The notes beneath the pieces were generated by a model. That model saw only the letters and a list, made by a program, of their open reading frames with translations, made no database searches and was not told the DNA's origin. The position numbers and the translations under genes were made by a program. Positions 28,244 through 64,000 of a stretch of 64,000 nt of DNA are shown here, one piece after another (position 1 is the stretch's first letter; every line of letters begins with the position of its first letter). Origin of the DNA: Selaginella moellendorffii (lineage: Eukaryota; Plantae; Lycopodiophyta); the NCBI RefSeq assembly GCF_000143415.4, contig NW_003314305.1, forward strand, positions 743,709 to 807,708, read 5' to 3'.

Positions 28244-28801
28244 TGTAAGCTCTTGAATTTGGACTTTCCGGGAGGTCACCCAGCCCAGTATTATTCAAAC
28301 CCAAGGACGCTTAACCCCAAATATCCCAAGACCCTTAACCGATTGGAAAAGGGGGTGCACTTTTGTTCATGGGCCCTTTCCCTCTATATTTGAACCCCAA
28401 CGGATCGTCTCTCGAGTCGTTCCCTTTGGTTGCTTGCAATCCACCACGCTTCCCTACAAGTTCACGCCCTCGTGAACGGAAGCTGAGAGCCGCAGCTCTC
28501 CCGAGAGCGACTTGACACCCTACCCCTCGGGTCGAACCCAGCGGGAGCAAATTGGACCAGCTAGATGTCAATCAACATGTGGTGTGATTCCCTTAGCCAA
28601 CCAACAGAGTCGGACCCGAGACCGCTCTGATACCAAATGTAAGCTCTTGAATTTGGACTTCCCGGGAGGTCACCCAACCCAGTACTATTCAAACCCAAGG
28701 ACGCTTAACCCCAAATATCTCAAGACCCTTAACCGATTGGAAAAGGGGGTGCACGAACCCCAACGGATCATCTCTCGAGTCGTTCCCTTTGGTTGCTTGC
28801 A
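28244..28801 (-). mobile_element. Cassandra-type TRIM (non-autonomous LTR retrotransposon with 5S rRNA-derived LTRs)
   Basis: TG...CA LTRs at 28244-28438 and 28638-28801; 5-bp TSD TGAAA at 28239-28243 and 28802-28806; PBS TGGTATCAGAGC (- strand, 28624-28635); purine tract ..GTGGTGGAT next to the left LTR; 5S core at 28261-28315 and 28655-28709. Confidence 0.93.
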
Positions 28802-29538: not shown

Positions 29539-32500
29539 AGAATGATGAGGTGATGGCTTAGATAGTGGTAGCATTACATGGTTTATACCATTAAAAAAAT
29601 CCTTTTATGACTTGATCTTTAATATTTTAGCCTATCAATCTATGATTTACTTGTTTTTATTTTTCATTTGAACTTCTTATTTTTAAAAGTTTTTTTGCAC
29701 TTTGTTGCTATGAGCTTTATGTTTGATCCTAAATGACAAATTTCATCTAGAGTTGAAGGAAATCTTGATTGCATTTTCTCTTTCTTGTCGTTTCATCATA
29801 GGTGGAGAAGTTACATTACATACTTATCTACTGATATTTAAAAGAATGAATCTAGATTTAAGGGATTTTATAAATAAAATCTGGCTTTAGTTAATTAAAT
29901 AGATAGATATATTTATAAATTGTATATACTCGTAAGTGAAATAAAACACCTTAGTCTACTATATATTTGCATGGTGTCAAGAGCTCATTGTTGAGAGAAG
30001 GGGAGTACTTATGAAATACTAAAATAATAGAGAAGAAAAGTTGAATTTATAATAAAGAGAAAAATTAACTTGGGTATAGGTCTATACTAATATTATATGC
30101 CTATCCATATGTATAGCAAGTTTTTAATTCAAATTGTATAAGTAAAAGTTTCAAGTTTGATTCCCACCATAGTCAGCAGTGTTAAATATACTCAACAAAT
30201 ATAAAAATATGGCAAATATATAATATCATTTTATGGTTTGGATATTAAGTACCAATTAGCAATTAAAGTGGTGTAAAATCACAGTTAAAAGGATTTCTTT
30301 AATAGAAATTCACAACTAACTTAAAAGCATGAGTATAATGAGATGAATATGAGACACAAATCTAAAGTAGATTAAAAGGGTGTTACATGGCAGTGGTCAA
30401 AGCGAAATTTTAACAAATGTAACACGTCTGGACTAAAAACCTCTAACTCGGAAAGTTAAAAGTGGGAGTGGAACTCTTAAAGAAGTATTCAAGGATGAGT
30501 ACGAAACAATTAGTGAACAAGAGAAAGAGACACAAAAAGGACCAATACATGGCAAAAGTGCAATATAGTAGTGGTATAAGTGAAAGTTTAATGAGCATAT
30601 AAGAAGGACTAACATATGGCAAATGTTGTGACATGTGAAAGTGTCAAAACTGAGTCCAAGAAAGAGTCTAAGATGGAACTCAAGGTTGAGTTTAAGATGG
30701 AAGCCAAGATTGAATCCAAATCCGAATACTAATATAAGTCATAAGGTGAAAGCCCATAGTGATTGTTGCCCAAGAAGGGAAGGGAAGAGGGGGTCCAAAA
30801 GTCTAGTAAGTAGAGTGTGGGGGTTAGACTTCAATGGAATCAATTTGGCCAGGAAATGTTAGTGTGACTTAAAAAGGCTACACCTGTATGGTAGATAATG
30901 ATATAACTATTGAGGAATACAAAGTTAAAGTAAGTATAAATGGACAAATGAGGTAACTTAGTGAAGTGTTCAAAAACTGGCTCTAACTCCCTTAAGAGAT
31001 CAAATGGTTAATGCTCCCAATTCAAGTGTGGGTGGCATTACCTACTTAGATACCTAAGAGTGGATATAAATAGATGGATAGGTTAAAGGTATGGTCAATT
31101 AATTTGAGATATTATTTAACTCCTTATTAAATGTATTTATTTTTTATTCTACATTTGATTTGAGTCTAAACCCAAGCTCCATACCATACTAGTTGATAGA
31201 ATACCCATATCTTTGTATTAGGCTATTAGTATATCAAAATAGTATCAAACAATCTTAAAGCATCCAAAATCCTAATGTTAAGATTAATACACAAAATGAA
31301 GCCAAATTGAGTTACTTTATATTTTTATTTCTTCACTTTTTAGTTATATGTTCAAGAGTTCAACTCTATTTCTTCATTCAATGGCCTGAGATTTAAATTC
31401 CACTCCATTAATCTTAGTATATATATTGAAAGGGTTGAATTCCACTTTATATGGTAATGCACTATAAGGTATAGGGTAAAAATATGCTATATGAGCACAA
31501 GTTGAATATTATACTGGTCAAAGAAGAATGTTATGAGAAAGTGTAAACTCTTAATCAATGAAGTTTGTATTAACACCGCTATCATCTAAAACTTATAAAG
31601 AAAAATTAAATTTAATGGGCTGAAAGTGAGTAATGATATTGAAAGGTTTGGAGATCTTTAATGAAGGAATGGAGTTAATATAAGGAAAAGGAGTTGACAC
31701 TCACAACCCTTAATTAGACTAAATATTTTTGTTTTCTAGAACCACAAATGTTACATCCATTGTATAAGTCTGAGAGTGACTGCAAGCTCATGAAAGTGGT
31801 TTACATCATTATAATTCATGTAAAGTTAGTTCTCAATCTAACATCAATATTTAGCCTCAGAAATACACTATTAATATAAAGCTCTAATCTTTATTAGAAC
31901 TATGCTTTACTTATATACACCGAGATTATAATATAGAAAATGAGGCTAAAGATTCAATCTTAAAAGAACTCTCTAGTAAAGTTTCCAAACCATGTTAAAG
32001 ATGGGACTTAGGGTTAGTAACCTGGGACATGACAAGTGCTAAATAGGCTTTTTAAGAAAATGCTTTAAAGCAACTCCCATTCCCAAAATTCCTAAAAGTA
32101 AAATCAATTGTAATGTTCTTGACTCAAGTGGAGTGGTGCCCCACTTGAGTAATTAGTTTTCATCCCTTCTTTGGGGGCTTGGGCCTTCCTTTTGGAATGG
32201 AAGTTGAAAGTTAGGGTATTTATATCAAACTTATGCCACAGTGTTCCCTTTTGAGGTTTCAAACTAAGAAATATACCCAAGGTTTAGGATTTAAAGTACC
32301 CCATAAACAAGTTTTGTTATACCAAGAGATATTAAAAAATTTGAAAGCTTGGTGTACTTAGTTGCTTGTGTTTCTAACGAATGTATTTAAACCTTAAGTT
32401 TAGAGTTTAGAAATCTATGAAAAGATGGCTAACACCAAATTGCTCATATAGTAAGTAGCTATAGCTAAGTAGGACTAAATAGGAGTTAGTACAATATCAT

Positions 32501-44123: not shown

Positions 44124-44185
44124 TTAATAAATAAGCAAGTTATAGATAGTTTACTTAATAAATAAGCAAGTTATAGATAGTTTAC
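44124..44185. repeat. 31-bp perfect tandem duplication in a 3' UTR
   Basis: TTAATAAATAAGCAAGTTATAGATAGTTTAC twice; includes AATAAA. Confidence 0.9.
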
Positions 44186-44364: not shown

Positions 44365-46575
44365 ATGGGGAGGTTTGGAGTGATCGGTGCTGGCGAGAGG
44401 CTGGATGCCAAGCCTGGGGAAGCTACCGCTAGTGAATCCGAGGCGCTCAAGGAGCCTTTTCTTGTGATCGATGCCGGGGATGCGAATTCCGAGGATGCTG
44501 CTCTAGCTGAAGCTTCCACTGAGCGTGAAATCGGCGGCGGAGATCGTCCGAAGGAGAGGCTGGCGTCGCTCGATGTGTTTCGGGGATTAAGCATTGCGGT
44601 AAGCGGAGAAACAGTAGAGAAATATTTGGTTGTTCTGAGACGATCGTCCACAGATGATGATTTTGGTCGACAATGCAGGGGGCGAGTGGCCAGCGATCAA
44701 TCATTCGCCGTGGAATGGAGTCACTCTAGCTGATCTCGTCATGCCATTTTTCCTCTTCATCGTTGGAGTGGCTCTGGCTCTGGTCTATAAGGTGTTCTTC
44801 ATTGTGTCTTTCTAGATTTTTCCGTGATCACCATGACGCTTTCCTCTCGCAGAAAATTCCCAGCAAGCTTGACTCCACCAGGAAGGCCATACTTCGCTCG
44901 CTAAAGCTGTTCTTCTTGGGTGTTTTCCTACAAGGTTAGCTCGTCCTTTGAGTATTGTTTTGCTTATGTGAGTGTTGTAGGTGGCTACTTCCATGGAGAA
45001 AACGATTTGAGCTATGGAGTAGACTTGACGCTCATTAGATGGTGCGGAATTCTCCAGGTTTGCTTCGCCACGCTCGATTGTGTAGTTCTTACTAAACGTT
45101 TTCCCACCAGAGAATTGCATTTGTTTACTTGGTCGTTGCGTTGTGTGAGGTCTGGTTACCAAGAGTGCAAGGATCATACTTTGGGTTTATGCAAAACTAC
45201 CTCTTTCACTGGTATAACAGCTGGGTCTGCTTCTCCATTTCCTCACGTTTTTTTTCCATTTTTGTGCTTTCAGGATCTTCGTCGTCGTGACACTGACAGT
45301 TTATCTATCACTTTTGTATGGACTTAAAGTTCCTGACTGGCAATTCGAGCTACCAAATAATAGAAACATAACAATGACTGTAAGTTTGCGAATCTTTTGT
45401 CTGATGATATCGACTTGCAGAGTTTTCAATTCTTAGGTGACTTGCGGTACCAGAAGTAATCTTGATCCTCCCTGCAACGCTGTTGGCTACGTAGATCGAC
45501 AAATATTAGGAGTTAATCATCTTGACCAGCGACCTGTTTTTATACGTACCGAGGTATTCACATTTGGTTTTAGCTCTTTCATGTCTCATCTCTATTTATT
45601 TATTTATTTCCTTTTTTTTTTGTTATCGCAGTCTTGTAGCATAAATTCTCCTGACTATGGACCCCTTCCTGCGGATGCTCCTGTGTGGTGTCACGCGCCA
45701 TTTGATCCAGAAGGAATCCTAAGGTAGCATTTTTAATCATGTCTTGCGTTCTGATATCTTTTTGTGTCACACTAGCTCTGTATCAGCAATAGTAACATGC
45801 TTTATTGGTCTGCACTATGGCCATTTTATCGTCCAATGCAAGGTACTTGTCATCCGCCCTTGGTTTTATATTCTTGCTGATGCCTGGGAATGGATGTTTC
45901 AGGAGCACAAACAAAGGATTATAAACTTCATCGTCCCAGCATTCATACTTTTGGCTCTTGGCTATGTCTTGCATCTGCTTGGTACGAGCGCTTTGTAGTT
46001 TATGCTCATTAAAATCATTTGCTTTGCACCAGGGATTAAGATGAACAAGCCGCTCTACAGCTTCAGCTACATGTGCTTCACTGCCGGTGCCGCTGGAGCC
46101 GTTTTTTGCTTACTTTACATCCTCGTATGTCTCCATTCATGCTCGTCTCCAGATATTTTAATCCATGCTGCTCGTTCCAGGTCGACGTTTATGACATCCG
46201 GTATCCAACTTTGCTGCTGGAATGGATGGGAATGAACTCGCTGATCATCTACACGCTTGCAGCAACCGATGTTCTCGTGGATTTCATCCAAGGATTCTAC
46301 TGGAAGCAGCCGCAAAAAAATCTGGTACGTAGCTTCTCCTCGCAAGTTTGTTCTCGTAAATCTTGGGAGCCTTGGATTTCACAGATAAGCATTATAGGAG
46401 AGCTGTTGGTAACGCTCTCGACGTTTTGCAGGTGACATTTACGCGAGAGCACGTATTTTTCGCGATGATTCCATCGCAAAGATGGGCCATGCTTGTGTAC
46501 GTTTTGTTTGGCATCTGTTGCTGGTGCGTGATCGCTGGAGCTCTCAAAGCCAAGGGAATATTCTGGAAGTTTTAA
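44365..46575 (+). CDS. HGSNAT: Heparan-alpha-glucosaminide N-acetyltransferase-like membrane protein, multi-exon
   Basis: RLASLDVFRGL, MILVDNAGG.WP.INHSPWNG..LADLVMPFFLFIVG, CNAVGYVDRQILG, APFDPEGIL, MNKPLYSFSY, WMGMNSL, GIFWKF*. The start codon is uncertain. Confidence 0.93.
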
Positions 46576-46598
46576 GAGTTTAAAGAATTTCTAGTCTA

Positions 46599-46700
46599 GG
46601 GTATCGAACTTGAAACCTCGTACGTCCTGGGATTCGAACTGGAGATCCTACACGTCCCGGGATTCGAACTTTAGACCTTGGCAGTCCCAGGATTCGAACT
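46599..46700 (-). repeat. 30-bp-period array of four tRNA B-box-like motifs
   Basis: TCGAACT ends at 46610, 46640, 46670 and 46700. The - strand reads AGTTCGAATCC(C), the tRNA T-loop / Pol III B-box. Confidence 0.88.
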
Positions 46701-46719
46701 TGTCCCATTTGAGAAAAAT

Positions 46720-48700
46720 TTCTATAGGTTTCAGTGCTCGCTCTGTGGCCAAGGTGACAAGATTCCCGTGAAAGGACTCTCCGTGGCAATCTGCGCTTAT
46801 ATTTTTAACGCCAGACAATCCTCACAACGCGAACGAGATTGGGGACGTTGAACTCAACACTCTAAAGATCAGACTCTCGACGTCTCGTAGATTCCTGCCA
46901 TCAACACATAGGCCGCAAACGCAAGCTTAATAACTTGCTTAGTACCGCCGAGGCCGCTGCTCAGGCTCTCTGATAATCTCTTGGACGACGAGCAAGAGGG
47001 CGATATATGTGGTTCCACTCGTGGAGCAGTGAGTACTTTGAAAGCTCGGATAGAAGCCGGGTGATCGTCAGAGTTCTGGTCAGCATGGCACAGGGAATGT
47101 CAGCCTCTTTAGACCAATACCAGTGACACCCCCGACTTCACACCTTTGAGCCAACAAGCCTAAGTAGTCTTCGCCAGATTCTTTTTGTGCTCATGAACTT
47201 TTGAGGATTCTGACCAACATTTTTGGCGGCCAAGGTTGCTCACGATGCTGCAAACTTGAGCGGGGATTGGGGGCTCGTAAACATCCTACAGTGCACGGTG
47301 ACGCAAACTTAGTTTGCGGTCTCGCTCTGTACAGCCGCTTGTGCAGCTTCTCGACTCGCCGTCCAGCAGAGCTCCTGGAATAAAAAACAAGTGTAAAACA
47401 TTCACCGCAGCCACCCATGGAAGTATGCATACCCCTGCCTCGATTTTCTCCCATGGTATTACTGGATTTGTATATTGGAAATTATAGAAAAGCGATTGCT
47501 AAAGGAGTGTGGGACAAGGTGGATTATCTTCCTGATTATGGAGTTGGGCTTATTTTTTCCCCACAATGAATCTATGTGGGGGAAGAAATGAGATGGTCTG
47601 TTGAGTGGTGGGACAATCCGTCTATTGCATGTTGCTGGGCTCCTCGAAAACAAAAAGTCAGCACGAGATCTCCATCCCGATCTCGATCCCGATTTCCCAG
47701 GTGTCGCGTGTTTAACTCATGAATCTCACGACTGAAGAACAGGGAGAGAAAAAAAGGAGAAGCAAGGAAAGTAAGAGAACACTCTCCAAAACGAAGAAGA
47801 GTAGCTCCGGCCTGCCCCAGCTTAGAAAGGCTGCTGGAACGTAAATATAAGCTCTTCACACTTTTTTACAGGGCCTCGGGAAAAGCTGGCCAGCCAATTG
47901 GACTTTCGGGCAGACGACATGAACCATGCAGAGCAGGTTGGGTGCTCGTACTATATGTGATGGAAGAAGGCGATGCTTTGTTTCTTGCTCGGATTTATCC
48001 CTGGACATTTTTTTTGCTTTCTTTACGTCAGATCTTAGAGTCCTCTAGCAGCAACAAAGATTCATGCAACATCGAAAGCCGTCACCTCATGAAGATCCTG
48101 AGGTGTATCAACTCCAGGGATCTTCCCTTCCTATTGCCTCTTTCGCGTCATGTCGCCTCGATAGCACTTTCCCAACACATTCCTTCACAAAGCAGAAATC
48201 GTGCATGCCAAAGAAATGACTATAAAAGAGCTGAAAAGATTGTGACTTACCATTCTCGAGCTAGAACTTTGCTTCCTACTGCTTCTTGGATCGTTATGTC
48301 AAACATTTGCCTGGTTTTGAGACCGTCAGTATGAATGATAGATCATCTTTAAGCTTTGGAAAATGCTTCGGCCTTGGCAGCGGGTGGATGCGGCCAATCG
48401 GGCGTGACATATTACGAGGAAGATCTCCTAGAGGTCGAGCCTAACACTGCGCTGGAAATAATTTTTCCTTGTCTGTTTTCTGATCTTTATGACGTTGCTA
48501 GCAGAAAATGTACAAGGCAAGTTCGAGTGTAAAATCCAAACCGATTCTCTAGTTTGTCAAGGAGCTAACATTCTTAATTTTTGCCTTTCTAGCAGCTGCA
48601 AAGGCGCCTTAAGGCGGCGAGATACTAAATCAGCCGAGGACCATATCCAAAGCCTTCGTCGCAAGTACGTCAGAGTCAGATTTCTCTTCTTTGCTTTCTT
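46720..48700. pseudogene. Collage of unidentified degenerate gene fragments (copy 1; also about 52640-54360 and 61405-64000)
   Basis: Three colinear copies with different indels. No intact ORF. Confidence 0.55.
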
Positions 48701-49170
48701 TTAAAGAAAAGAACAAATTAATCAATCAAATATATATACATCATCCAATGAGAAATAAATATGGCAAAGCAGTAGTTTCTTAAACATCTTTCTCTTTGTA
48801 TGTTTTCCTGGGCAAAAAATTGGCATTCTTCTTTCTCTCAGCCTTAAGAAGAGGGAATTAAAGTCCACCACCACTGCTGTCCACCTTTGCTCTCTGCCTT
48901 TGCATTTGGTCGTTTCTCAGGTTCAGTTAGAGTGCTGCTCTAGGTACTTTACTAACTTGAAGCAGCTTCTTATTTTTGTTTGGCAACAGAAAAACTAAAA
49001 TGTGATTGATGACTGGTGATAAGAGGCCGAGATTTCCCTGCCACAAACGCGTCCATTGCGATTCTTCAGAAAATTGGCTCGTTTTTAAGTTTAAACGTTC
49101 TTCACTTTCAAACTTTCATGCAAATCGTTGGATTGTGACGAGGATGAAAATGTATACATATTCAAGAGAT

Positions 49171-51486
49171 TCATATCTCCATCGCCCTTGACAAAATGTA
49201 CGGCTCTATAAAACGTCTGTCCCTGCTTCTCAAGTGCCAAGGTACGGTCGGGAACTCAAACCATGATCTTCTTAGCAAGTGCTTCATAACCACGCTGTTC
49301 TGCTCCAAGCAAACGGCAAAATACTTGGACTTGAGCCACAGCCGATCTTCCCTGTTGGAGTAGGGGATGACATCCCACAAACCCAGTACAAACTCCCAAA
49401 CAATGATGGCCACTAGAGTATTCCTGATGCTGCACACCATATGAACCGAGGTGGTACACTGGTGTACGGAGACGACGACGATTCTCGGAGCCGTAATGTT
49501 ACCCACTGCCCATAAATAAGTGTATTCATATGAAGTGTCTAACACTTGAATCAGTTTTTCCCATGTCTCCTGGGGAATCTTGGCGATGCATTTTCCGCCA
49601 GGGTCGGCCAGAAACCAGATTTCCATTGTGGGTCGCACGATTGCCGGTCGTCCATTCAGTTGAATGAGTGGACATTTTACGTGAAACTGATAGCTGTATG
49701 CGCAGAAGTCATGGCAGTCACGGCATGGGGTTTGAACTTGCTCCTGAGAAACCCACTCATCACTTTCCCAGTTGTATTGAAAAACCGTCTGCCTCTGGGA
49801 TGCTACCACCCTATCCAGCATGAAGTATGCATATGGCCCAAGCAGGATGACATTCTCAGCGTCCCTAGCGCCACATTCATCAGCTGGAGGCCATGGTAGC
49901 CTCCGCTCATTAAAGAAAGTCTCCACCGGTGTCAATGTAGCAATGCCCCTGCGAGAATTTCCAACTTGCCACTGTGGACGAGTTGAATTATTGAAGCTAA
50001 CCACTGCAGGAGCTACCTCCTTTAACTCAGTGAAGAAAATGACCAGCAGCTTTTCTTGACTTATGCATGCAACCCTGAGGATACGTTCCATTTCCGGACT
50101 CGGAGCCATTACTCGGTTTGTCGAGAAGATTTTCTTGAGAACGTTGGTAACATACAAGGTGCTCCCCTCCCACGAGATTAAGAGGGGACCGTGTGTGACT
50201 AAGGGAGCACGGTGGGCAAAGTTCTTGTCTCTGATCATCCTTGACCAGCCTTTATCGGACCTAAACAGACATAACTCGCTGTGTTTCTTGTTCCAGAAGA
50301 CAAGGGCGGGCTCTTGATATCGCTTGAGCAAACGTTGGCCTGTCCTGCGCCAGTTGTGGAATACCATGCTCAGTGCTCTAATATCCCTGACAGTGCACAA
50401 GAGTTGCGCGACTTGCTGCAGAAGGTCAGTAGGCAGATTGGACCACTTCTGGCCATCAACATTCTCTCCATGATTATAATCAAGTGACTTGACTGGCTTC
50501 AGTTTGAGCAAGTCCCTCAACCTTCGATAGCGATGAGCATACCAAATTCCAGCCTCAAAATCATGGATGTAAACAATCTCCACGCATCCCTGGCAAGTAA
50601 AGAAGGCATAAAGAAAGACGCCATCCGAGCGCCGTGTAATGTTAGCCACACCCGCTTCCAGTGGCGGCTGAAGATTAACCAAGGCTTGAGGTAGGCCATC
50701 AGCGTTAATCCGCCATGTCTCTTCCGAGTAATGCACTCTCATGTTCTTGACCTGGCCTTGACTCCATTTGACCGTCCACACTGGTTCCCTGCACCACTCA
50801 TCCCTTTCCAAATCATATCTCACGCACGGTGTGTTCCACCAGGAAGAGGGCTCACAAAACATGACATGAAGAAAGCCACCCGCCAGTGCACTGTATCCAG
50901 GCCACCGGGAGTCACCATACATGGTGGTCTCGCGACCAGTGAATCCAGGAGAATAACGAGACTTAACTCTCCACATCCCAGTTGTTGGATCGAAGATAGC
51001 AGAAGTGATGAGAAAGCTGTCCTGGGGGGCCAAAGCTGAATCGCTATAGACAACCAGGAGCTGGAACTTGTCAAGGCTGGATCCAAGCGCAGATGTGCTC
51101 AAGACCAAGGACGAGGAGGAGCTGGTCACAAGCTCTGGTGGAGATGGACAGATGCAAGCCATGCCAGTCGAGACATCCAAGACGATGAGCTGCCGGCGCA
51201 TGCTCCACAGTGCCACGAGTGGTCCACCGTCACTCGCAACTCTGTTCTTCCAGTGGCAAGCGATGAGAATGCGGCTGATCCTGCAGCTGTTTCTGTTTTT
51301 GTTCCATACCAGGAACTGACCTTTGGGTGTGTTAAGCACAAGCGCCCAAGTGTGGAACCTCAAATCAGAGCCTCCCTGATCCTCACCGCCAATGGTGCTC
51401 AGTGGCACGAACTCGAGTATGTTGATCCTTGAATCCAGTAGCTCGTCGGAAGCCTCTACATCCTGCAGGAGCTCAACCGAATCCAT
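49171..51486 (-). CDS. F-box protein with internal F-box and duplicated two-module architecture, copy 1 (771 aa)
   Basis: Intact intronless ORF with internal WSNLPTDLLQQVAQLL.TVRDIRALSMVFHNWRR. Kelch-like signatures (YDLERDEW, YNWESDEW) in both halves. Confidence 0.85.
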   Translation of the reverse strand: MDSVELLQDVEASDELLDSRINILEFVPLSTIGGEDQGGSDLRFHTWALVLNTPKGQFLVWNKNRNSCRISRILIACHWKNRVASDGGPLVALWSMRRQLIVLDVSTGMACICPSPPELVTSSSSSLVLSTSALGSSLDKFQLLVVYSDSALAPQDSFLITSAIFDPTTGMWRVKSRYSPGFTGRETTMYGDSRWPGYSALAGGFLHVMFCEPSSWWNTPCVRYDLERDEWCREPVWTVKWSQGQVKNMRVHYSEETWRINADGLPQALVNLQPPLEAGVANITRRSDGVFLYAFFTCQGCVEIVYIHDFEAGIWYAHRYRRLRDLLKLKPVKSLDYNHGENVDGQKWSNLPTDLLQQVAQLLCTVRDIRALSMVFHNWRRTGQRLLKRYQEPALVFWNKKHSELCLFRSDKGWSRMIRDKNFAHRAPLVTHGPLLISWEGSTLYVTNVLKKIFSTNRVMAPSPEMERILRVACISQEKLLVIFFTELKEVAPAVVSFNNSTRPQWQVGNSRRGIATLTPVETFFNERRLPWPPADECGARDAENVILLGPYAYFMLDRVVASQRQTVFQYNWESDEWVSQEQVQTPCRDCHDFCAYSYQFHVKCPLIQLNGRPAIVRPTMEIWFLADPGGKCIAKIPQETWEKLIQVLDTSYEYTYLWAVGNITAPRIVVVSVHQCTTSVHMVCSIRNTLVAIIVWEFVLGLWDVIPYSNREDRLWLKSKYFAVCLEQNSVVMKHLLRRSWFEFPTVPWHLRSRDRRFIEPYILSRAMEI

Positions 51487-51525
51487 GCCTTTGCCCTTTT
51501 GCCCTTTTGGAGATTTTCTCCCAAC

Positions 51526-51597
51526 GGGATTCGAACTCGCGACCCTGTACGTCCCGTGATTCGAACTCGAGACCTTGTATGCCCCAGGATTCGAACT
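51526..51597 (-). repeat. 30-bp-period B-box array (three units) at a duplication junction
   Basis: GGGATTCGAACTCGCGACCCTGTACGTCCC-type units; TCGAAC at 51531, 51561 and 51591. Confidence 0.88.
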
Positions 51598-51705
51598 TGA
51601 AAGGCCCTATTTGAGAAATTTTTTTGCCTTGCATGTGACGAGCAATGGACGAGGCGCTCAACCTCGCGCGAGCCGATCTCTCATGGATTCCAAGCGACCG
51701 AGGAT

Positions 51706-52492
51706 ATAGTAACATGTTTTATTGGTCTGCACTATGGCCATTTTATCGTCCAATGCAAGGTACTTGTCATCCGCCCTTGGTTTTATATTCTTGCTGATGC
51801 CTGGGAATAGATGTTTCAGGAGCACAAACAAAGGATTATAAACTTCATCGTCCCAGCAGTCATACTTTTGGCTCTTGGCTATGTCTTGCATCTGCTTGGT
51901 ACGAGCGCTTTGTAGTTTATGCTCATTAAAATCATTTGCTTTGCACCAGGGATTAAGATGAACAAGCCGCTCTACAGCTTCAGCTACATGTGCTTCACTG
52001 CCGGTGCCGCTGGAGCCGTTTTTTGCTTACTTTACATCCTCGTAACTCTCCATTCATGCTCGTCTCCAGATATTTTAATCCATGCTGCTCGTTCCAGGTC
52101 GACGTTTATGACATCCGGTATCCAACTTTGCTGCTGGAATGGATGGGAATGAACTCGCTGATCATCTACACGCTTGCAGCAACCGATGTTCTCGTGGTTT
52201 TCGTCCAAGGATTCTACTGGAAGCAGCCGCAAAAAAATCTGGTACGTAGCTTCTCCTCGCAAGTTTGTTCTGGTAAATCTTGGGAGCCTTGGATTTCACA
52301 GATAAGCATCATAGGAGAGCTGTTGGTAACGCTCTCGACGTTTTGCAGGTGACATTTACGCGAGAGCACGTATTTTTCGCGATGATTCCATCGCAAAGAT
52401 GGGCCATGCTTGTGTACGTTTTGTTTGGCATCTGTTGCTGGTGCGTGATCGCTGGAGCTCTCAAAGCCAAGGGAATATTCTGGAAGTTTTAA
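51706..52492 (+). pseudogene. HGSNAT: Duplicated 3' half of the HGSNAT-like gene
   Basis: Near-identical to 45789-46575 including introns. No 5' exons. Confidence 0.9.
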
Positions 52493-52515
52493 GAGTTTAA
52501 AGAATTTTTAGTCTA

Positions 52516-52617
52516 GGGTATCGAACTTGAAACCTCGTACGTCCTGGGATTCGAACTGGAGATCCTACACGTCCCGGGATTCGAACTTGAGACTTGTATG
52601 TCCCAGGATTCGAACTT
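52516..52617 (-). repeat. 30-bp-period B-box array (four units), duplicate of 46599-46700
   Basis: Same units and flanks. Confidence 0.88.
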
Positions 52618-54780
52618 GTCCCATTTGAGAAAAATTTCAAGCTTAGTACCTCCGAGGCCGCTGCTCAGGCTCTCTAATAATCTCTTGGACGACGAGCAAG
52701 AGGGCGATATATGGTGCTGTGGTTCCAGTGAGTACTTTGAAAGCTCGGATAGAAGCAGAGTTCTCGTCAGCATGGCACAGGGAATGTCAGCCTCTTTAGA
52801 CCAATACCAGTGACACCCCTGCCTTCACACCTTTGAGCCAACAAGCCTAAGTAGTCCTTGCCAGATTCCTTTTGTGCTCGTGAACTTTTGAGGATTCTGC
52901 CCAACATCTTTGGCGGCCAAGGTTGTTCACGATGCTGCAAACTCGAGATTGGGGGCTACAATGCACGGTGACGCAAACTTAGTTTGCGTTCTCGCTCTGT
53001 ACAGCCGCTTGTGCAGCTTCTCGACTCGCCGTCCCAGTCCGTCCAGCAAGTAGCAGTAGAGCTCCTGGATTAAAAACACGTGTGAAACATGCATGGAAGT
53101 TTGTATACCCCTGCCTCGATTTTCTCCCACGGTATTACTGGATTTGTATATTGGAAATTATAGAAAAGCGATTGCTAAAGGAGTGTGGGACAAGGTGGAT
53201 TATCTTCCTGGCTGGTATAATCCCTATTATGGAGTTGGGATGGCCAACAGCAGCGCTTATTTTTTCCCCGCAACGAATCTATGTGGGGGAAGAAATGAGA
53301 TGGTCTATTGAGTGGTGGGACAATCCGTCTATTGCATGTTGCTGGGCTCCTCGAAAACAAAAAGTCAGCACGAGATCTCCATCCCGATCTCGATCCCGAT
53401 CTCCCAGGTGTCGCGTGTTTAACTCATGAATCTCACGACTGAAGAACAGGGAGAGAAAAAAAGGAGAAGCAAGGAAAGTAAGAGAACACTCTCCAAAACG
53501 AAGAAGAGTAGCTCTGGACCCCCGGCCTGCCCCAGCTTAGAATGCTGGAACGTAAATATAAGCTCTTCACACTTTTTTACAGGGCCTCGGGAAAAGCTGG
53601 CCAGCCAATTGGACTTTCGGGCAGACGACATGAACCATGCAGAGCAGGTTGGGTGCTCGTACTATATGTGATGGAAGAAGGCGATGCTTTGCTTCTTGCT
53701 CGGATTTATCCCTGGACATTTTTTTTGCTTTCTTTACGTCAGATCTTAGAGTCGTCTAGCAACAACAGAGATTCATGCAACATCGAAAGCCGTTACCTCA
53801 TGAAGATCCTGAGGAGTATCAACTCCAGGGATCTTCCCTTCCTATTGCCTCTTTCGTGTCATGTCGCCTCGATAGCACTTTGCCAACACATTCCTTCTCA
53901 AAGCAGAAATCCTGCACGCCAAAGAAATGACTGTAAAAGAGCTGAAAAGATTGTGACTTACCATTCTCGAGCTAGAACTTTGCTTCCTACTGCTGCTTGG
54001 ATCGTTACGTCGATATGAATGATAGATCATCTTCTAAGCTTTGGAGAATGCTTTGCGGCCAATCGGGCGTGGAAGATATTACGAGGAAGATCTCCTAGAG
54101 GTCGAGCCTAACACTGCGCTGGAAATAATTTTTCCTTGTCTATTTTTTGATCTTTATGACGTTGCTAGCAGAAGATGTACAAGGCAAGTTTCAGTGTAAA
54201 ATCCAAATCGATTCTCTAGTTTGTCGAAGATCTAACATTCTTTACTTTTTCCTTTCTAGCAGCTGCAAAGGCGCCTTAAGGCGGCGAGATACCAAATCAG
54301 CCGAGGACCAGATCGAAAGCCTTCGTCGCAAGTACGTGAGTCTTCTTTGCTTTCTTTTAAAAAACGAACAAATTAATCAATCGAATATATATACATCATC
54401 CAATAAGAAGTAAATATGGCAAGCAATATGCGCTTGAGTAGTTTCTTAAACATCTTTCTCTTTGTATAAATTCGCATTCTTGTTTCTTTCAGCCTTAAGA
54501 GAGAGGGAATAAAGTCCACCACCCTGATAGAAAGTTAGAGTGCTGCTCTATAGGTACTTTACTAACTTGAAGCAGCTTCTTATTTTTGTTTGGCAACAGA
54601 AAAACTAAAATGTGATTGACGACTGGTGATCAGAGGCCGAGATTTCCCTGCCGCAAACGCGTCCATTGAGATTCTTCAGAAAATTGGATCGTTTTTAAGT
54701 TTGAACGTTCTTCACTCTCAAACTTTCATGCAAATCGTTGGATTGTGACGAGGATGAAAATGTATACATATTCAAGAGAT

Positions 54781-57243
54781 TCATATCTCCATCGCCCTTG
54801 ACAAAATGTACGGCTCTATAAAACGTCTGTCCCTGCTTCTCAAGTGCCAAGGTACGGTCAGGAAGTCAAACCATGATCTTCTTAGCAAGTGCTTCATAAC
54901 CACGCTGTTCTGCTCCAAGCAAACGGCAAAATACTTGGACTTGAGCCACAGCCGATCTTCCCTGTTGGAGTAGGGGATGACATCCCACAAACCCAGTACA
55001 AACTCCCAAACAATGATGGCCACTAGAGTATTCCTGATGCTGCACACCATATGAATCGAGGTGGTACACTGGTGTACGGAGACGACGACAATTCTCGGAG
55101 CTGTAATGTTACCCACTGCCCATATATAAGTGTATTCATATGAAGTGTCTAACACTTGAATCAGTTTTTCCCATGTCTCCTGGGGAATCTTGGCGATGCA
55201 TTTTCCGCCAGGGTCGGCCAGAAACCAGATTTCCATTGTGGGTCGCACGATTGCCGGTCGTCCATTCAGTTGAATGAGTGGAGACTTTACGTGAAACTGA
55301 TAGCTGTATGCGCAGAAGTCATGGCAGTCACGGCATGAGGTTTGAACTTGCTCCTGAGAAACCCACTCATCACTTTCCCAGTTGTATTGAAAAACCGTCT
55401 GCCTCTGGGATGCTACCACCCTATTCAGCATGAAGTATGCATATGACCCAAGCAGGATGACATTCTCAGCGTCCCTAGCGCCACATTCATCAGCTGGAGG
55501 CCATGGTAGCCTCCGCTCATTAAAGAAAGTCTCCACCGGTGTCAATGTAGCAATGCCCCTGCGAGAATTTCCAACTTGCCACTGTGGACGAGTTGAATTA
55601 TTGAAGCTAACCACTGCAGGAGCTACCTCCTTTAACTCAGTGAAGAAAATGACCAGCAGCTTTTCTTGACTTATGCATGCAACCCTGAGGATACGTTCCA
55701 TTTCCGGACTCGGAGCCATTACTCGCTTTGTCGAGAAGATTTTCTTGAGAACGTTGGTAACATACAAGGTGCTCCCCTCCCACGAGATTAAGAGGGGACC
55801 GTGTGTGATTAAGGGAGCACGGTGGGCAAAGTTCTTGTCTCTGATCATCCTTGACCAGCCTTTATCGGACCTAAAGAAGCATAACTCGCTGTGTTTCTTG
55901 TTCCAGAAGACAAGGGCGGGCTCTTGATATCGCTTGAGCAAACGTTGGCCTGTCCTGCGCCAGTTGTGGCATACCATGCTCAGTGATCTAATATCCCTGA
56001 CAGTGCACAAGAGTTGCGCGACTTGCTGCAGAAGGTCAGTAGGCAGATTGGACCACTTCTGGCCATCAACATTCTCTCCATGATTATAATCAAGTGACTT
56101 GACTGGCTTCAGTTTAAGCAAGTCCCTCAACCTTCGATAGCGATGAGCATACCAAATTCCAGCCTCAAAATCATGGATGTAAACAATCTCCACGCATCCC
56201 TGGCAAGTAAAGAAGGCATAAAGAAAGACGCCATCCGAGCGCCGTGTAATGTTAGCCACACCCGCTTCCAGTGGCGGCTGAAGATTAACCAAGTCTTGAG
56301 GTAGGCCATCAGCGTTAATCCGCCATGTCTCTTCCGAGTAATGCACTCTCATGTTCTTGACCTGGCCTTGACTCCATTTGACCGTCCACACTGGTTCCCT
56401 GCACCACTCATCCCTTTCCAAATCATATCTCACGCATGGTGTGCTCCACCAGGAAGAGGGCTCACAAAACATGACATGAAGAAAGCCACCCGCCAGTGCA
56501 CTGTATCCAGGCCACCGGGAGTCACCATACACGGTGGTCTCGCGACAAGTGAATCCAGGAGAATAACGAGACTTAACTCTCCACATCCCAGTTGTTGAAT
56601 CGAAGATAGCAGAAGTGATGAGAAAGCTGTGCTCTGGGGCCAAATGTGAATCGCTATAGACAACCAGGAGCTGGAACTTGTCAAGGCTGGATCCAAGCGC
56701 AGATGTGCTCAAGACCAAGGACGAGGAGGAGCTGGTCACAAGCTCTGGTGGAGATGGACAGATGCAAGCCATGCCAGTCGAAACATCCAAGATGATGAGC
56801 TGCCGGCGCATGCTCCACAGTGCCACGAGTGGTCCACCGTCACTAGCAACTCTGTTCTTCCAGTGGCAAGCGATGAGGATGCGGCTGATCCTGCAGCTGT
56901 TCCTGTTCTTGTTCCATACCAGGAACTGACCCTTGGGTGTGTTAAGCACAAGCGCCCAAGTGTGGAACCTCAAATCAGAGCCTCCCTGATCCTCACCGCC
57001 AATGGTGCTCAGTGGCACGAACTCGAGTATGTTGATCCTTGAATCCAGTAGCTCGTCGCAAGCCTCTATATCCTGCAGGAGCTCAACCGAATCCATGCCT
57101 TTTCCCTTTTGCTGCGCCAACCCTTTATCTCCGCATGACATTTTTGTGATTAGGTTGTTTTGCTTAAGCAAACAAGCTTTAATAGACAATGCCTTTTGTG
57201 ATGAAGTACCACTAGGAATTTCATGGCTAGTTTTCTTTAACAT
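54781..57243 (-). CDS. F-box protein, copy 2 (820 aa as ORF; true start may be the internal MDSVELL)
   Basis: Near-identical to copy 1; the F-box retains VCHNWRR. The N-terminal 49 aa are absent from the copy 1 ORF. Confidence 0.85.
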   Translation of the reverse strand: MLKKTSHEIPSGTSSQKALSIKACLLKQNNLITKMSCGDKGLAQQKGKGMDSVELLQDIEACDELLDSRINILEFVPLSTIGGEDQGGSDLRFHTWALVLNTPKGQFLVWNKNRNSCRISRILIACHWKNRVASDGGPLVALWSMRRQLIILDVSTGMACICPSPPELVTSSSSSLVLSTSALGSSLDKFQLLVVYSDSHLAPEHSFLITSAIFDSTTGMWRVKSRYSPGFTCRETTVYGDSRWPGYSALAGGFLHVMFCEPSSWWSTPCVRYDLERDEWCREPVWTVKWSQGQVKNMRVHYSEETWRINADGLPQDLVNLQPPLEAGVANITRRSDGVFLYAFFTCQGCVEIVYIHDFEAGIWYAHRYRRLRDLLKLKPVKSLDYNHGENVDGQKWSNLPTDLLQQVAQLLCTVRDIRSLSMVCHNWRRTGQRLLKRYQEPALVFWNKKHSELCFFRSDKGWSRMIRDKNFAHRAPLITHGPLLISWEGSTLYVTNVLKKIFSTKRVMAPSPEMERILRVACISQEKLLVIFFTELKEVAPAVVSFNNSTRPQWQVGNSRRGIATLTPVETFFNERRLPWPPADECGARDAENVILLGSYAYFMLNRVVASQRQTVFQYNWESDEWVSQEQVQTSCRDCHDFCAYSYQFHVKSPLIQLNGRPAIVRPTMEIWFLADPGGKCIAKIPQETWEKLIQVLDTSYEYTYIWAVGNITAPRIVVVSVHQCTTSIHMVCSIRNTLVAIIVWEFVLGLWDVIPYSNREDRLWLKSKYFAVCLEQNSVVMKHLLRRSWFDFLTVPWHLRSRDRRFIEPYILSRAMEI

Positions 57244-57610: not shown

Positions 57611-57835
57611 TTGATCACTGTAGCCTCGGGTACCATTTCCTTCGTACCCCGCGAAACACTTGCAACGAAATGATGTTCCTTCGTTGCACACGATCCTTGA
57701 CTGGTGGCTGCGCGATAAAGCGATAAGCTCGTGACTTAGAGAACAGAGCTTGCTCTTTAAACGTGTCTTCCACGTTGATCATCAGCACCAGCTCTTCTCA
57801 TTTTTGGATTTGTTCTCTGGAAGTTCCGGCCGAAA

Positions 57836-58706
57836 TTGTCCGCACTGCCAGGCACTAGAAACTTTTTCAAAGAAAACTCAAGCATCTTTACCTGGGGAGA
57901 GATGGGGGGAACAACCAAGTGCTTCAGAAGCGACCTCAAGCTACTGGCAGCTTTGGCAGTCTACAAGGGGGCACCACGGTGGCCATCAAGAAAGCCAACA
58001 ACGGCAATGCCCCTCGCATTCAACAGTTTCTAAACGAGGTTACCATCCTCTCCAAAGTGAAACACAGAAATCTCGTCAAGGTGATGGGATGTTGCGTAGA
58101 AAGCGAAGTACCTCTCGTGGTCTACGAGTTCGTGCCAAGAGGAACACTGTACGAGCATCTGCACAAACGAGGAGATACGTTATCGTGGAAAAACCGTTTA
58201 AGAATTGCGACAGAGACAGCAGTGGCTCTTACGTACCTTCACTTTGCAGCTTCTCCACTGATATATCACCGGGACGTCAAATCCTCCAACATCTTGTTGG
58301 ACGAAAAGCTCACGGCCAAAGTAGCGGACTTTGGGATTTCCAAGCTGGTACCCATAGATTCCACTCACATTTCCACAACTCTGCATGGAACACTGGGTTA
58401 CATAGATAGTACCAGCAAAGCTATCAGCTTACAGATAAGAGCGACGTTTACAGCTTTGGAGTAGTCATCTTGGAGCTAATAACAGGTCAGATGCCTGTAG
58501 ACTTCTCTCGCTGTGCTTCAGATAAAAACCTGTCCACATTTGCAATGAGCGTCATACAAAGAGGAGCCATCAGCGAGTTGATCGACAAGAGGTTGGATGC
58601 TAGAACTCCAGAAATGCTGGAGTGCGTTGCAAAAGTTGCAAACTTGGCAGCTCTGAGCTTACAGTTCGACGGAAGTAGCAGGCCGACAATGAAGTTTGTT
58701 CTTTAA
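57836..58706 (+). pseudogene. Wall-associated kinase-like (WAK/WAKL) kinase-domain pseudogene
   Basis: VAIKKA, QFLNEVTILS..KHRNLVK..GCC.ESEVPL.VYEF, IYHRDVKSSNILLD, KVADFGISK, YQLTDKSDVYSFGVV. Frameshifts near 57960 and 58408; no ectodomain seen. Confidence 0.9.
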
Positions 58707-58849
58707 GAGCTTAAAAAGGCAATGCAAATCCTTATGGAGTAAGAAGTTTCTAACAAACTTTTGCAATATTCTTTGTTTGTCTCCATAACTGCAAGAGAAA
58801 ACAATGAACTCCAAAAACATAATGTCTTCGAATCTTTACCTCTCAACTG

Positions 58850-59696
58850 CCGAAATTGAATCCAAAACCACCGCCAGAAGTTATACTTTCCCAAACAGGC
58901 CGCTCAAAGTTTGAGACTCCCGAGCGTTTATCTCGTTCCAGAGCTGTTCTAGAGACCCGGGACGAAGCTCCTCGTACCTGGATTTGAACTTGTCGTATAA
59001 GGTAACTATCAAAACTTTCTTCCAAGAACAAAGTCTCAAAGAACACTTTACCTTCTTACAAGCCGATCGGGCTGAGACGTAAGAGAAATCTTCTTCCTGA
59101 ATGGAAAGAAGCAAAAACTATCAAAACCTTCTTCCAAGAACAAAGTCTCAAAGAACACTTCACCCTAGTACAAGCCGATCGAGCTGAGACGTAAGAGAAA
59201 TCCTCTTCCTGAATGGAAAGAAACAAATCAAAACCTTCTTCCAAGAACAAAGTTCTCAAAGAACAACTTACCTTTGTCCAAGCCGATCGAGCTGAGACGT
59301 AAGTCTTTCTCCAGCTTCCTTGGAAAAAAAAATCCTCCTTTCAGCTCCGCGAGGACCAAATTCCGCCACACAGCGCTTCCTGAAAACATAGAATGCCTCG
59401 CTCGAGACGCCCGACCGAGCCAGATCCTTGGCATCCAGCAGCGCCAGAATATCACTGACGATCTCATCGCTGAGACGCTGGAGACTCCCAAGCCCTGGAT
59501 CACGAATATTTTGCTTGCCCGTGAAGAGGAGATTCCCCAGCGGCTAGATGGCGCGGTGCTTGGATGCGAATGCGAGCCCAAATTCCACACCAGGGCTCTC
59601 AACTCCAGGATCCTCCGATTCATCACTAGAATAGCTACACAAATCTTGGCATCTTTTTTCTTCCTCGTCTTCTTCTTGCCGCCTCTTGCACCATGA
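58850..59696 (-). pseudogene. JMJ22: 5' relic of an F-box/JmjC protein (JMJ22-like)
   Basis: I*PLGNLLFTGKQNIRDPGLGSLQRLSDEIVSDILALL, WRNLVLAELKG and GSWRKTYVSA match the recalled JMJ22 N-terminus. TAG at 59544-59546; JmjC domain missing. Confidence 0.7.
59005..59303. repeat. Tandem repeat, about 110 bp x 2.7
   Basis: ATCAAAAC.TTCTTCCAAGAACAAAG...CAAGCCGATCG.GCTGAGACGTAAG at about 59008, 59120 and 59227. Confidence 0.9.
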
Positions 59697-60870: not shown

Positions 60871-62376
60871 TTTATTTATGGTTGATTACCGATAGTTAAA
60901 AAAAATTAAAAATATTATAAATCTCATAAACTATAAAATACCTTTGAAATCAAATCTATTAATATTATAGTTAGTGATTTTACAACTTTAGAAAATATTT
61001 GTTAAATGTTTTTTTAAATGACCACTTTGAGTGTATTTGTTTCACTTCTTTCCAAACAGCACAATCTGCACATTATAAATAAATAGAAAAAACTTTAAAA
61101 GTTTTAATTAAACCTGAAAAATGAATTTTAGTGTTGCATTGTCTTATTTTTATGCTACCATTATACAAGCTAAAGTAGTAATAATCCCCCACAGTCTTAG
61201 TTTTTATTAATATCTAAATTTATCACTTATTTGACTTTCAAAATTTTGTTTGTTTGTTTATTTATTTCATTTAAAGTGTTGTGATTATTTATTTTGTGCA
61301 AATTTAAACACACTTTTTTTTCTATTGTAGTGCATGTGTAAGTGTGAATTACAAAAAAATTTAATCACTTTTAATGTTTTTTTTATTTTGGTGCATAAAA
61401 ACCCATTTCTAGAGGTTTCAATGCTTGTTCTCTAGCCAAGCTTAATTCCTGTGAAAGGACTCCCATTTCTCTTGGTGAATGATCTCCCTGTGGCAATCAG
61501 TGCGCTTATATTTTTAGTGCCAGACAATTCTCACAAGGTGAATATTGAGCTCAGCACTCTAAAGATGACTCTCAACGTCTTGTACATTCCTGCCATCAAC
61601 ACATAAGCCGAGAATAAATCCACACTCAAGCCCACATTCTTTCAAATGCAAGCTTAATGACTTAGTGACGATGAGGCCGCTGCTCTCGATCATCTCTTGG
61701 ACAAGGGCGATATATGGTGCAGTGGTTCCACTCATGGAGGTGAGTACTTTGAAAGCTTGGATAGAAGCCAGGTGATCGGCAGAGTTCTCATCAGCATGCC
61801 ACAGGGAATGTCAGCCTCTTTAGATCAATACCAGTGACACCCCCGACTTCACACTGTTGAGCCAACAAGCCTAAGTAGTCTTCACCAGATTCTTTTTGTG
61901 CTCGTGAACTTTTGAGGATTCTGACCAACATCTTTGGCAGCCAAGGTTGTTCACGATGCTTCAAACTCGAGCGGAGATTGGGGGCTACAGTGCACGGTGA
62001 TGCAAACTTAGTTTGCGCTTGTGCAGCTTCTCGACTCGCCGTCCCAGTCTGTCCAGCAAGTGGATTTAAAAAACACGTGTACAACATGCACCTCAGCCAC
62101 CCATGCCTCGATTTTCTTCTATGGTGTTACTGGATTTGTGTATTGGACATTATAGAAAAGCGATTGCTAAAGGAGTGTGGGACAAGGTGGATTATCTTCC
62201 TGGCTGGTATAATCCCGATTATGGAGTTGGGATGAACAGCAACGCTTATTTTTTCCCACAACGAATCTATGTGGGGGAAGAAATGAGATGGTCTGTTGAG
62301 TGGTGGGACAATCCGTCTATTGCATGTTGCTGGGCTCCTCAAAAACAAAAAGTCAACACGAGATCTCCATCCCGAT

Positions 62377-63099
62377 AGTTCTTCCTCCTCGTGTGCGCGT
62401 CTCTCCGCTGCTAACATGGTATCGGAGCAATTGGCTCCTTGATCCTGAGAATGGCGCTTGCTGGCCAGGAGGCTAGTGATGAGGAGGAGGATGAGCCTCC
62501 CGATTGCAATCCCTCTTGCAATGTTTGGGACGCTTGAGGCGTTGCACCAAGGCACCAGGCTGTGTACAGGTGCTGAGCAACAAGCAGCAGCAAGTAGAGA
62601 ACAAAGCCAGTGGGAGATTGAGAGATTTCAACAACCCACATCAAGAATTGGGTCAAGATTCAAGAACATTGCATAGCAATTCTTTGCAGGAATTTCCAGC
62701 AATTGGGAAGGATGCTTATGGAGATTCAAGTGCCTAGTCGCAGAGAAGTGGGAGCCTGGCAGTTCACGGCCAAGACCACATGCTAGAGGCAAGATTGAAG
62801 CCATAGCAAGAAGCAAAGAGTGTGCAAGCAAGAACAAGACCAAGAACCAAGTTTTGGGTAGTTGATTGATGAGTTTTTCATATGCTTTTACCATCAGCTC
62901 TCCATGCTCATCATCTCAGACTAGCTAGGCACGATTCAGGCTTAGATTCAGACTTGGATCAGTCGCCTGATCGTGAGTGGGAGTGTTAGAGGTAGAGATG
63001 ATGTGGCAGTAGTTGCTTTATGTATATGTACACAATCATATACAGATATATATATATACAGTTCTTCCTCCTCGTGTGCGCGTCTCTCCGCTGCTAACA
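62377..63099 (+). mobile_element. TRIM / miniature LTR retrotransposon with a 116-bp LTR (5' LTR truncated)
   Basis: 3' LTR 62984-63099 (TGTTAG...CTAACA); identical 40-bp 5' LTR remnant at 62377-62416; PBS TGGTATCGGAGC 62417-62428; PPT GAGTGGGAG; empty sites in the paralogous blocks. Confidence 0.88.
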
Positions 63100-64000
63100 G
63101 ATCTCGATCCCGATCTCCCAGGTAGCTGCGGCGTCGCGTGTTTACTCAACTCATGAATCTCACGACTGAAGAACAAGAGAAAAAAAGGAGAAGCAAGGGA
63201 AATAAGAGAACACTCTCCAAAACGAAGACGAGTAACTCTGGGCCCCCGGCCTGCTCCATCTTAGAAAGGCTGCTGGAATGTAAATAAGCTCTTCACACTT
63301 TTTTACAGGGCCTCGGGAAAAGCTGGCCGGCCAATTGGACTTTCGGGCAGACGACATGAACCATGCAGAGCAGGTTGGGTGCTCGTACTATATGTGATGG
63401 AAGAAGGTGATGCTTTGCTTCTTGCTCGGATTTATCCCTGGACATTTTTTTTGCTTTCTTTACGTCAGATCTTAGAGTCGTCTAGCAACAACAGAGATTC
63501 ATGCAACATCGAAAGCCGTTACCTCATGAAGATCCTGAGGAGTATCAACTCCAGGGATCTTCCCTTCCTATTGCCTCTTTCGTGTCATGTCGCCTCGATA
63601 GCACTTTTGCCAACACATTCCTTCTCAAAGCAGAAATCCTGCACGCCAAAGAAATGACTGTAAAAGAGCTGAAAAGATTGTGACTTACCATTCTCGAGCT
63701 AGAACTTTGCTTCCTACTGCTGCTTGGATCGTTACGTCGAACATTTGCCTGGTTTTGAGACCGTCAGTATGAATGATAGATCATCTTTAAGCTTTGGAAA
63801 ATGCTTCGGCCTTGGCAGCGGGTGGATGTGGCCAATCGGGCGGGAGATATTACGAGGAAGATCTCCTAGAGGTCGAGCCTAACACTGCGTTGGAAATAAT
63901 TTTTCCTTGTCTATTTTCTGACCTTTATGACGTTCCTAGCAGAAGATGTACAAGGCAAGTTTCAGTGTAAAATCCGAACCGATTCTCTAGTTTGTCGAAG

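What the first reader, a model, noticed from the sequence alone, without database searches (positions are those of the whole stretch)
46584..46722. Phased arrays of tRNA B-boxes (exact 30-bp period) at rearrangement junctions
Seen: three arrays (46599-46700, 51526-51597, 52516-52617) of 3-4 units. On the - strand the units read like GGGACGTACAGGGTCGCGAGTTCGAATCCC, which resembles a tRNA variable loop plus T-loop. TCGAAC is invariant in all 11 units while the rest drifts, the period is about three helical turns, and no A-box or cloverleaf is present. The arrays have imperfect inverted ends (..ATTTCT....TAGGG / CCC.ATTTGAGAAA) and sit at breakpoints. The third collage copy (about 61400) lacks the array. 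Established: isolated B-boxes bind TFIIIC and act as chromatin barriers in fungi and animals. Inference: this is a small mobile element carrying multimerised TFIIIC sites, acting as a portable insulator or promoter, or a SINE-derived minisatellite.
Basis: partly seen in the sequence, partly recalled or inferred. Interest (0 to 1): 0.75.

Follow-up and report, generated by a model that had tools for sequence, protein, structure and literature searches.

The report
tRNA-derived B-box minisatellite at duplication junctions
Three short arrays in the spikemoss Selaginella are built from a 30-base piece of an old tRNA gene in which only the motif that normally recruits the factor TFIIIC has been kept intact, and they sit at the joints of recent local duplications. 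Whether they move or bind TFIIIC could not be tested here.

Summary
There are three head-to-tail arrays: 46594-46722 (4 units), 51511-51625 (3 units) and 52511-52638 (4 units). The period is 30 bp, and TCGAAC is present in all 11 units.

Arrays 1 and 3 are copies of each other, inside a recent 5.7-kb tandem duplication that is 93-100% identical. So there are only two independent arrays. Array 2 is an older relative, about 83-87% identical, and lies in a 203-bp insert exactly at the duplication junction.

Read on the minus strand, one unit spans tRNA positions 44-73: variable loop, T arm, 3' acceptor strand and discriminator. No cloverleaf, A box, terminator, Rfam match or stable fold is present.

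The 10-nt core GATTCGAACT (the B box on the other strand) is significantly better kept than the spacers. The right end ATTTGAGAAA is also kept between arrays 1 and 2.

The claimed inverted ends are not significant. No further convincing copy exists in the window, and the Selaginella genome could not be searched, so mobility is unproven. The arrays are not the published Selaginella tRNA-bearing element Helenus-1_SMo.

Best reading: a small tRNA-derived repeat family whose B-box cores are kept as protein-binding sites, with TFIIIC the leading but untested candidate.

The parts
46594..46702 (-). Array 1: four 30-bp units (the last is truncated). The B-box sense is on the minus strand. It starts about 20 nt after the stop codon (46573-46575) of a plus-strand multi-exon membrane-protein gene.
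46703..46722 (+). Right terminus of array 1. It contains ATTTGAGAAA, which is conserved in array 2. The breakpoint of the 213-bp deletion in copy 2 and the start of homology with copy 3 both fall here.
46585..46593 (+). Left flank motif AGAATTTCT, matching array 2 in 8 of 9 positions. The 8-mer AATTTCTA at 46586-46593 recurs at 46717-46724.
51511..51625 (-). Array 2 with its termini: three units at 51521-51599, left motif AGATTTTCT, right terminus with ATTTGAGAAA plus a run of 7 T. It lies 35 nt upstream of the ATG (51486, minus strand) of the 771-aa F-box-family ORF.
51503..51705 (.). 203-bp insert at the junction of the tandem duplication, made of array 2 plus about 80 bp with no source in the window.
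52511..52638 (-). Array 3 with its right terminus. It is the recent duplicate of array 1. It has a 1-bp deletion and a cluster of changes in the spacer of unit 3.
45789..51502 (.). Duplicated unit A: the 3' part of the membrane-protein gene, array 1, non-coding DNA, and F-box ORF Y1 at 49171-51486 on the minus strand.
51706..57112 (.). Duplicated unit B, 93-100% identical to unit A in a gapped alignment. It lacks 213 bp directly to the right of array 3.
61394..64000 (.). Third partial copy (R3). Its homology begins exactly at the position of the array's right end. Only CCCATTT remains of the array, with AT-rich unrelated DNA to the left.
58944..58994 (+). Possible decayed relic of one or two units, with the core mutated to GGATTTGAAC. 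Borderline.

Best explanation
The arrays belong to a small family of roughly 115-135-bp repeats built from a minisatellite. The 30-bp unit of that minisatellite derives from the 3' part of a tRNA gene, positions 44-73.

Shown:
- Only the T-loop/B-box core, and a short right-end motif, have been held constant while the spacers decayed.
- There is no tRNA, SINE head or Pol III unit.
- One array was carried along by a recent 5.7-kb tandem duplication.
- An older family member lies in the filler at that duplication's junction.

Inferred:
- The cores are kept because a protein binds them. The tauB module of TFIIIC is the leading candidate, which would make these isolated B-box clusters like ETC sites.
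- Such bound or repetitive DNA is prone to breakage and to capture during repair, which would explain why breakpoints cluster at the array ends.

Whether the family spreads by transposition or only by local duplication and repair is open.
For: - Unit anatomy, read directly from the minus strand of the sequences: AGGTC (variable loop), 5 nt, TTCGAAT, 5 nt, 7 nt and 1 nt add up to 30.
- Core conservation among the 7 independent units: 2 of 70 core cells differ against 41 of 140 elsewhere (p about 1e-6; 0 of 5000 column shuffles).
- Core conservation between positionally matched units of arrays 1/3 and array 2: 0 of 30 core differences against 8-17 of 43-49 elsewhere (p from 8e-5 to 0.011).
- The core CpG is kept in 11 of 11 units, while flanking CpGs often read TG or CA.
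- The right end is conserved between arrays 1 and 2 (1 of 2000 shuffles; alignment).
- Array 2 is far more diverged from array 1 than unit A is from unit B.
- Breakpoints lie at the array ends.
- The B box is the high-affinity TFIIIC site, and ETC sites are B-box-only insulators (review PMC12409998).
Against: - There are only two independent arrays, and both lie within 5 kb.
- Genome-wide copy number is unknown.
- There is no binding, expression or methylation data.
- With the most conservative comparison, the core-conservation p value falls to 0.011.
- Conserved termini together with repeated internal motifs is also the pattern of a non-autonomous DNA transposon.
- Indels are frequent in this non-coding stretch, so one of the breakpoint coincidences is weak.
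- A 30-bp spacing may be too tight for several tauB modules to bind at once (inference).
Confidence: 0.4

Rival explanations
1. It is a non-autonomous mobile element, MITE-like or SINE-derived. The repeated core is a transposase-binding subterminal repeat or a former internal promoter. The conservation reflects selection on master copies rather than any host function.
For: - Two diverged copies share the same unit order and conserved left (8 of 9) and right (ATTTGAGAAA) end motifs, with variable spacers.
- Direct repeats flank each array (p about 0.02 each).
- One copy lies in a junction insert with no local source.
Against: - There are no significant inverted ends.
- The flanking repeats are alike in both copies, so they are not ordinary target duplications.
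- No empty site was found.
- There is no further convincing copy in 64 kb.
- There is no A box, tail or terminator.
- It does not match Helenus-1_SMo.
Confidence: 0.3
2. It is a neutral minisatellite left by a decayed tRNA pseudogene or SINE fragment. The apparent core conservation comes from small numbers, shared descent or short gene conversion between units. The junction position comes from the general instability of tandem repeats.
For: - Minisatellites derived from SINE parts are documented (PMC10702118).
- The local copies show mosaic changes compatible with conversion.
- Many indels occur nearby.
Against: - The core-versus-spacer contrast is significant in every test run.
- It includes a CpG that should decay fastest.
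- Conversion has no reason to stop at the core's edges.
Confidence: 0.2
3. The arrays are binding sites for another factor. For example, a GARP/LUX-type protein recognises GATTCG, which lies inside the core. On this reading they act as ordinary Pol II cis-elements for the flanking genes.
For: - Array 2 is 35 nt upstream of an ORF start.
- The core contains GATTCG (sequence).
- The motif assignment is from my own knowledge and was not tested.
Against: - The conserved block is 10-12 nt and matches the B box over its whole length.
- Arrays 1 and 3 sit behind a stop codon, not in a promoter.
Confidence: 0.1

Closest known systems
ETC (extra-TFIIIC) sites and B-box clusters of yeasts and mammals
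   Same: Both have B-box motifs without an A box, a tRNA or a Pol III unit, several close together, lying between genes. The conserved core equals the tauB recognition sequence (PMC12409998).
   Different: None has been described in plants, to my knowledge. Here the motifs form an exact 30-bp tandem array of visible tRNA descent, and no occupancy data exist.
SINE-derived satellites and minisatellites (for example, squamate sSats; PMC10702118)
   Same: Both are tandem repeats born from part of a tRNA-related repeat.
   Different: Here the unit is only 30 bp and the arrays have 3-4 units. The unit is confined to the T-arm and acceptor part, with selective retention of the B box.
Helenus-1_SMo, the tRNA-bearing TRIM of Selaginella (Kojima 2024, PMC10886601)
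   Same: Same genome, about 120 bp, and tRNA-related sequence.
   Different: Helenus has a whole tRNA-like sequence with an A box, TG...CA ends, a primer-binding site and 5-bp target duplications. None of these is present here, and its T-arm motif has no match in the window within 3 mismatches.
Tandem copies of a tRNA 3' end next to a bacterial tRNA gene (locus L172)
   Same: The same 30-nt period, covering the variable loop through the acceptor 3' strand.
   Different: That case is bacterial, sits next to an intact tRNA gene, and probably consists of attachment-site remnants. It is an analogy only.

Membership tests
tRNA gene / type-2 Pol III unit | Cloverleaf recognised by tRNA models | tested here: not met
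   ARAGORN finds 0 genes. Rfam finds nothing at gathering score or at E<=10. Fold z-scores range from -1.1 to +0.5.
tRNA gene / type-2 Pol III unit | A box upstream of the B box and a T-run terminator downstream | tested here: not met
   There is no A-box match and no downstream run of 4 or more T on the minus strand.
ETC-like isolated B-box site | B-box consensus present without a Pol III gene | tested here: met
   The minus-strand core AGTTCGAATCC is present in 9 of 11 units, and GTTCGA in 11 of 11. There is no gene.
ETC-like isolated B-box site | TFIIIC bound, with TFIIIB and Pol III absent | not testable with these tools
   This needs ChIP, DAP-seq or EMSA.
MITE / DNA transposon | Terminal inverted repeats | tested here: not met
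   no better than shuffles.
MITE / DNA transposon | Target-site duplication and empty sites | tested here: inconclusive
   Flanking direct repeats have p about 0.02, but they are alike in both copies. The paralogues give no clean empty site.
MITE / DNA transposon | Many dispersed copies | not testable with these tools
The window holds 2 independent copies.
SINE | tRNA-like head with A and B boxes, a body and a 3' tail | tested here: not met
   plus direct reading of the sequence ends.
Helenus TRIM | TG...CA LTR, primer-binding site, similarity to Helenus-1_SMo | tested here: not met
   The only primer-binding-site-like match is at 62417, in an unrelated insertion.
tRNA/SINE-derived minisatellite | Head-to-tail units that map onto part of a tRNA | tested here: met
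   Tandem Repeats Finder. The unit maps onto positions 44-73 by direct reading, although the T-stem pairing is degenerate.

The most novel reading that the evidence does not exclude
Plants have portable ETC-like elements: short tRNA-derived B-box arrays that bind TFIIIC without transcription, act as boundaries between genes, and act as fragile sites that seed segmental duplications.
Probability: 0.15. Interest if true: 0.7.

Novelty: new variant of a known kind. Interest (0 to 1): 0.4.

Why it matters
Isolated TFIIIC sites organise chromatin in yeasts and mammals but have hardly been described in plants. A tRNA relic in which only the B box survives, repeated in phase and sitting at duplication joints, would give a concrete plant locus for testing two things: TFIIIC binding outside Pol III genes, and its link to genome rearrangement. 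If it proves to be only a decayed repeat, it is an ordinary piece of genome debris.

Tried and rejected
- tRNA or other RNA gene: rejected by ARAGORN, Rfam and folding.
- Coding repeat: rejected. Most frames carry stops, and the one frame that stays open across arrays 1 and 2 has no protein relatives.
- Helenus-1_SMo: rejected.
- Array 2 as a copy of array 1 made during the duplication: rejected. It is about 83-87% identical, against 97-98% for the duplicated units.
- An earlier estimate of 76-79% identity between the two units was an artefact of ungapped matching.
- Scans of metagenome and prokaryote collections for two cores 30 bp apart returned mostly coding repeats and nothing related.
- A deamination-tolerant search for more phased cores in the window found none.
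- The scan's notebook by sequence and by words gave no further copy of this array.

Full report
**Observation.** The three arrays exist as described.
- Tandem Repeats Finder gives a period of 30 at 46604-46702, 51527-51597 and 52521-52618.
- TCGAAC is found in all 11 units at 30-bp steps. One step is 29 bp, caused by a 1-bp deletion in array 3.
- GGATTCGAAC with at most one mismatch is over-represented in the window: 12 hits against 3.6 expected.
- All arrays have the same orientation.

**Organism and setting.**
- The 771-aa ORF at 49171-51486 (minus strand) is 86% identical to the Selaginella moellendorffii F-box protein SELMODRAFT_404641. It has almost no other relatives.
- Arrays 1 and 3 begin about 20 nt after the stop codon (46573-46575) of a plus-strand multi-exon membrane-protein gene. 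Its exons look like the HGSNAT/DUF5009 type, but only a weak sub-threshold Pfam hit supports that.
- Array 2 lies 35 nt upstream of the ATG of the F-box ORF.

**Local history.**
- Self-BLAST and a gapped alignment show a simple tandem duplication. Unit A (45789-51502) and unit B (51706-57112) are 93-100% identical window by window.
- Arrays 1 and 3 are therefore one array, duplicated.
- Between the two units lies a 203-bp insert (51503-51705). It consists of array 2 plus about 80 bp with no source in the window.
- Array 2 aligns unit-for-unit with units 2-4 of arrays 1/3 but is only about 83-87% identical. It is therefore older than the duplication and is a separate member of the same repeat family.
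- Unit B lacks 213 bp starting exactly at the right end of array 3.
- A third partial copy (R3, from 61394/61405) starts its homology exactly at the array's right end. It keeps only CCCATTT, with unrelated AT-rich DNA to its left.
- So the claim 'at breakpoints' holds. However, indels are common in this non-coding stretch, so not every coincidence is weighty.

**What the unit is.** On the minus strand the consensus unit reads, in order:
- AGGTC (a class-I variable loop),
- five bases,
- TTCGAAT,
- five bases,
- seven bases,
- one base.

That is 30 nt in total, corresponding to tRNA positions 44-73. The T-stem pairing is degenerate. ARAGORN, Rfam (even at E<=10) and folding give nothing. There is no A box and no downstream T run. 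It is a tRNA relic, not a gene and not a SINE head.

**Conservation.**
- Among the 7 independent units, the core GATTCGAACT differs in 2 of 70 cells, against 41 of 140 elsewhere (p about 1e-6; no column shuffle matches it).
- Between positionally matched units of arrays 1 or 3 and array 2, the core has 0 of 30 changes against 8-17 of 43-49 elsewhere. The p value ranges from 8e-5 to 0.011, depending on which copy is used and whether the first five bases are counted.
- The core's CpG is intact in every unit, while neighbouring CpGs often read TG or CA.
- The right-end motif ATTTGAGAAA is also conserved between arrays 1 and 2.

**Mobility.**
- The proposed inverted ends are not better than chance.
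- Each array is flanked by weak direct repeats (p about 0.02). These are similar in both arrays, so they are not ordinary target duplications.
- No clean empty site exists among the paralogues.
- No further convincing copy is in the window. Two borderline relics lie at 58944-58994 and 30141-30166.
A protein search with an ORF across the array found nothing.
- Scans of metagenomes and prokaryote genomes gave only coding repeats. The one exception was a bacterial analogue: three 30-bp copies of a tRNA 3' end beside an intact tRNA gene (L172).

**Comparison with known elements.**
- The published Selaginella tRNA-bearing TRIM, Helenus-1_SMo, has a 120-bp LTR and an 85-bp interior (PMC10886601). 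It carries a complete tRNA-like sequence, TG...CA ends and a primer-binding site. Its motifs are absent from the arrays.
- SINE-derived tandem repeats are known in reptiles (PMC10702118).
- B-box-only ETC sites that bind TFIIIC without Pol III and act as insulators are known in yeast and human (PMC12409998).
- Other notes of this scan report B-box clusters before a Selaginella TFIIIC subunit gene, and tandem T-arm mimics inside LTR elements. I could not compare sequences with them.

**Verdict.**
- The arrays are a tRNA-derived minisatellite family in which the B-box core, and a short end motif, are under constraint.
- The most likely reason is protein binding, with TFIIIC the obvious candidate. 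A non-autonomous transposon with repeated binding motifs is nearly as likely, and the two readings can overlap.
- The junction positions are best explained by carriage in a recent duplication, together with capture or breakage at repetitive or bound DNA. That replication forks stall at tRNA genes is established in yeast (from my own knowledge); its application here is inference.

Noticed in passing
window 62377-63099: A 724-bp insertion is present only in the third copy. It is bounded by roughly 40-bp direct repeats, and TGGTATCGGAGC follows the first repeat directly. That is the same 12 nt that open the interior of Helenus-1_SMo. It is a candidate very small LTR-type retroelement and a recent insertion.
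   Followed up: partly
window 59004-59303: A 112-bp tandem repeat of 2.7 copies, followed by a 29%-GC block (59.7-61.4 kb) that abuts the third copy.
   Followed up: no
window 28624-28635 (minus strand): The canonical initiator-Met primer-binding site TGGTATCAGAGC lies inside the AT-rich 26-34 kb block, probably within an LTR retrotransposon.
   Followed up: no
L172:2709-2800 (minus strand): A bacterial MAG carries three tandem 30-bp copies of a tRNA 3' part directly beside the intact tRNA gene. The period is the same as here.
   Followed up: no
window 57750-58710 (+): A protein kinase gene (Pkinase, E about 1e-30) ends just before the possible array relic at 58944-58994.
   Followed up: partly
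window 44124-44185: A perfect 31-bp tandem duplication in an intron-like stretch of the membrane-protein gene.
   Followed up: no
window 46654-46683 vs 52571-52599: The two recent array copies differ by a cluster of changes in one spacer. Array 3 shares the state of array 2 there, which could mean short gene conversion between neighbouring arrays.
   Followed up: partly
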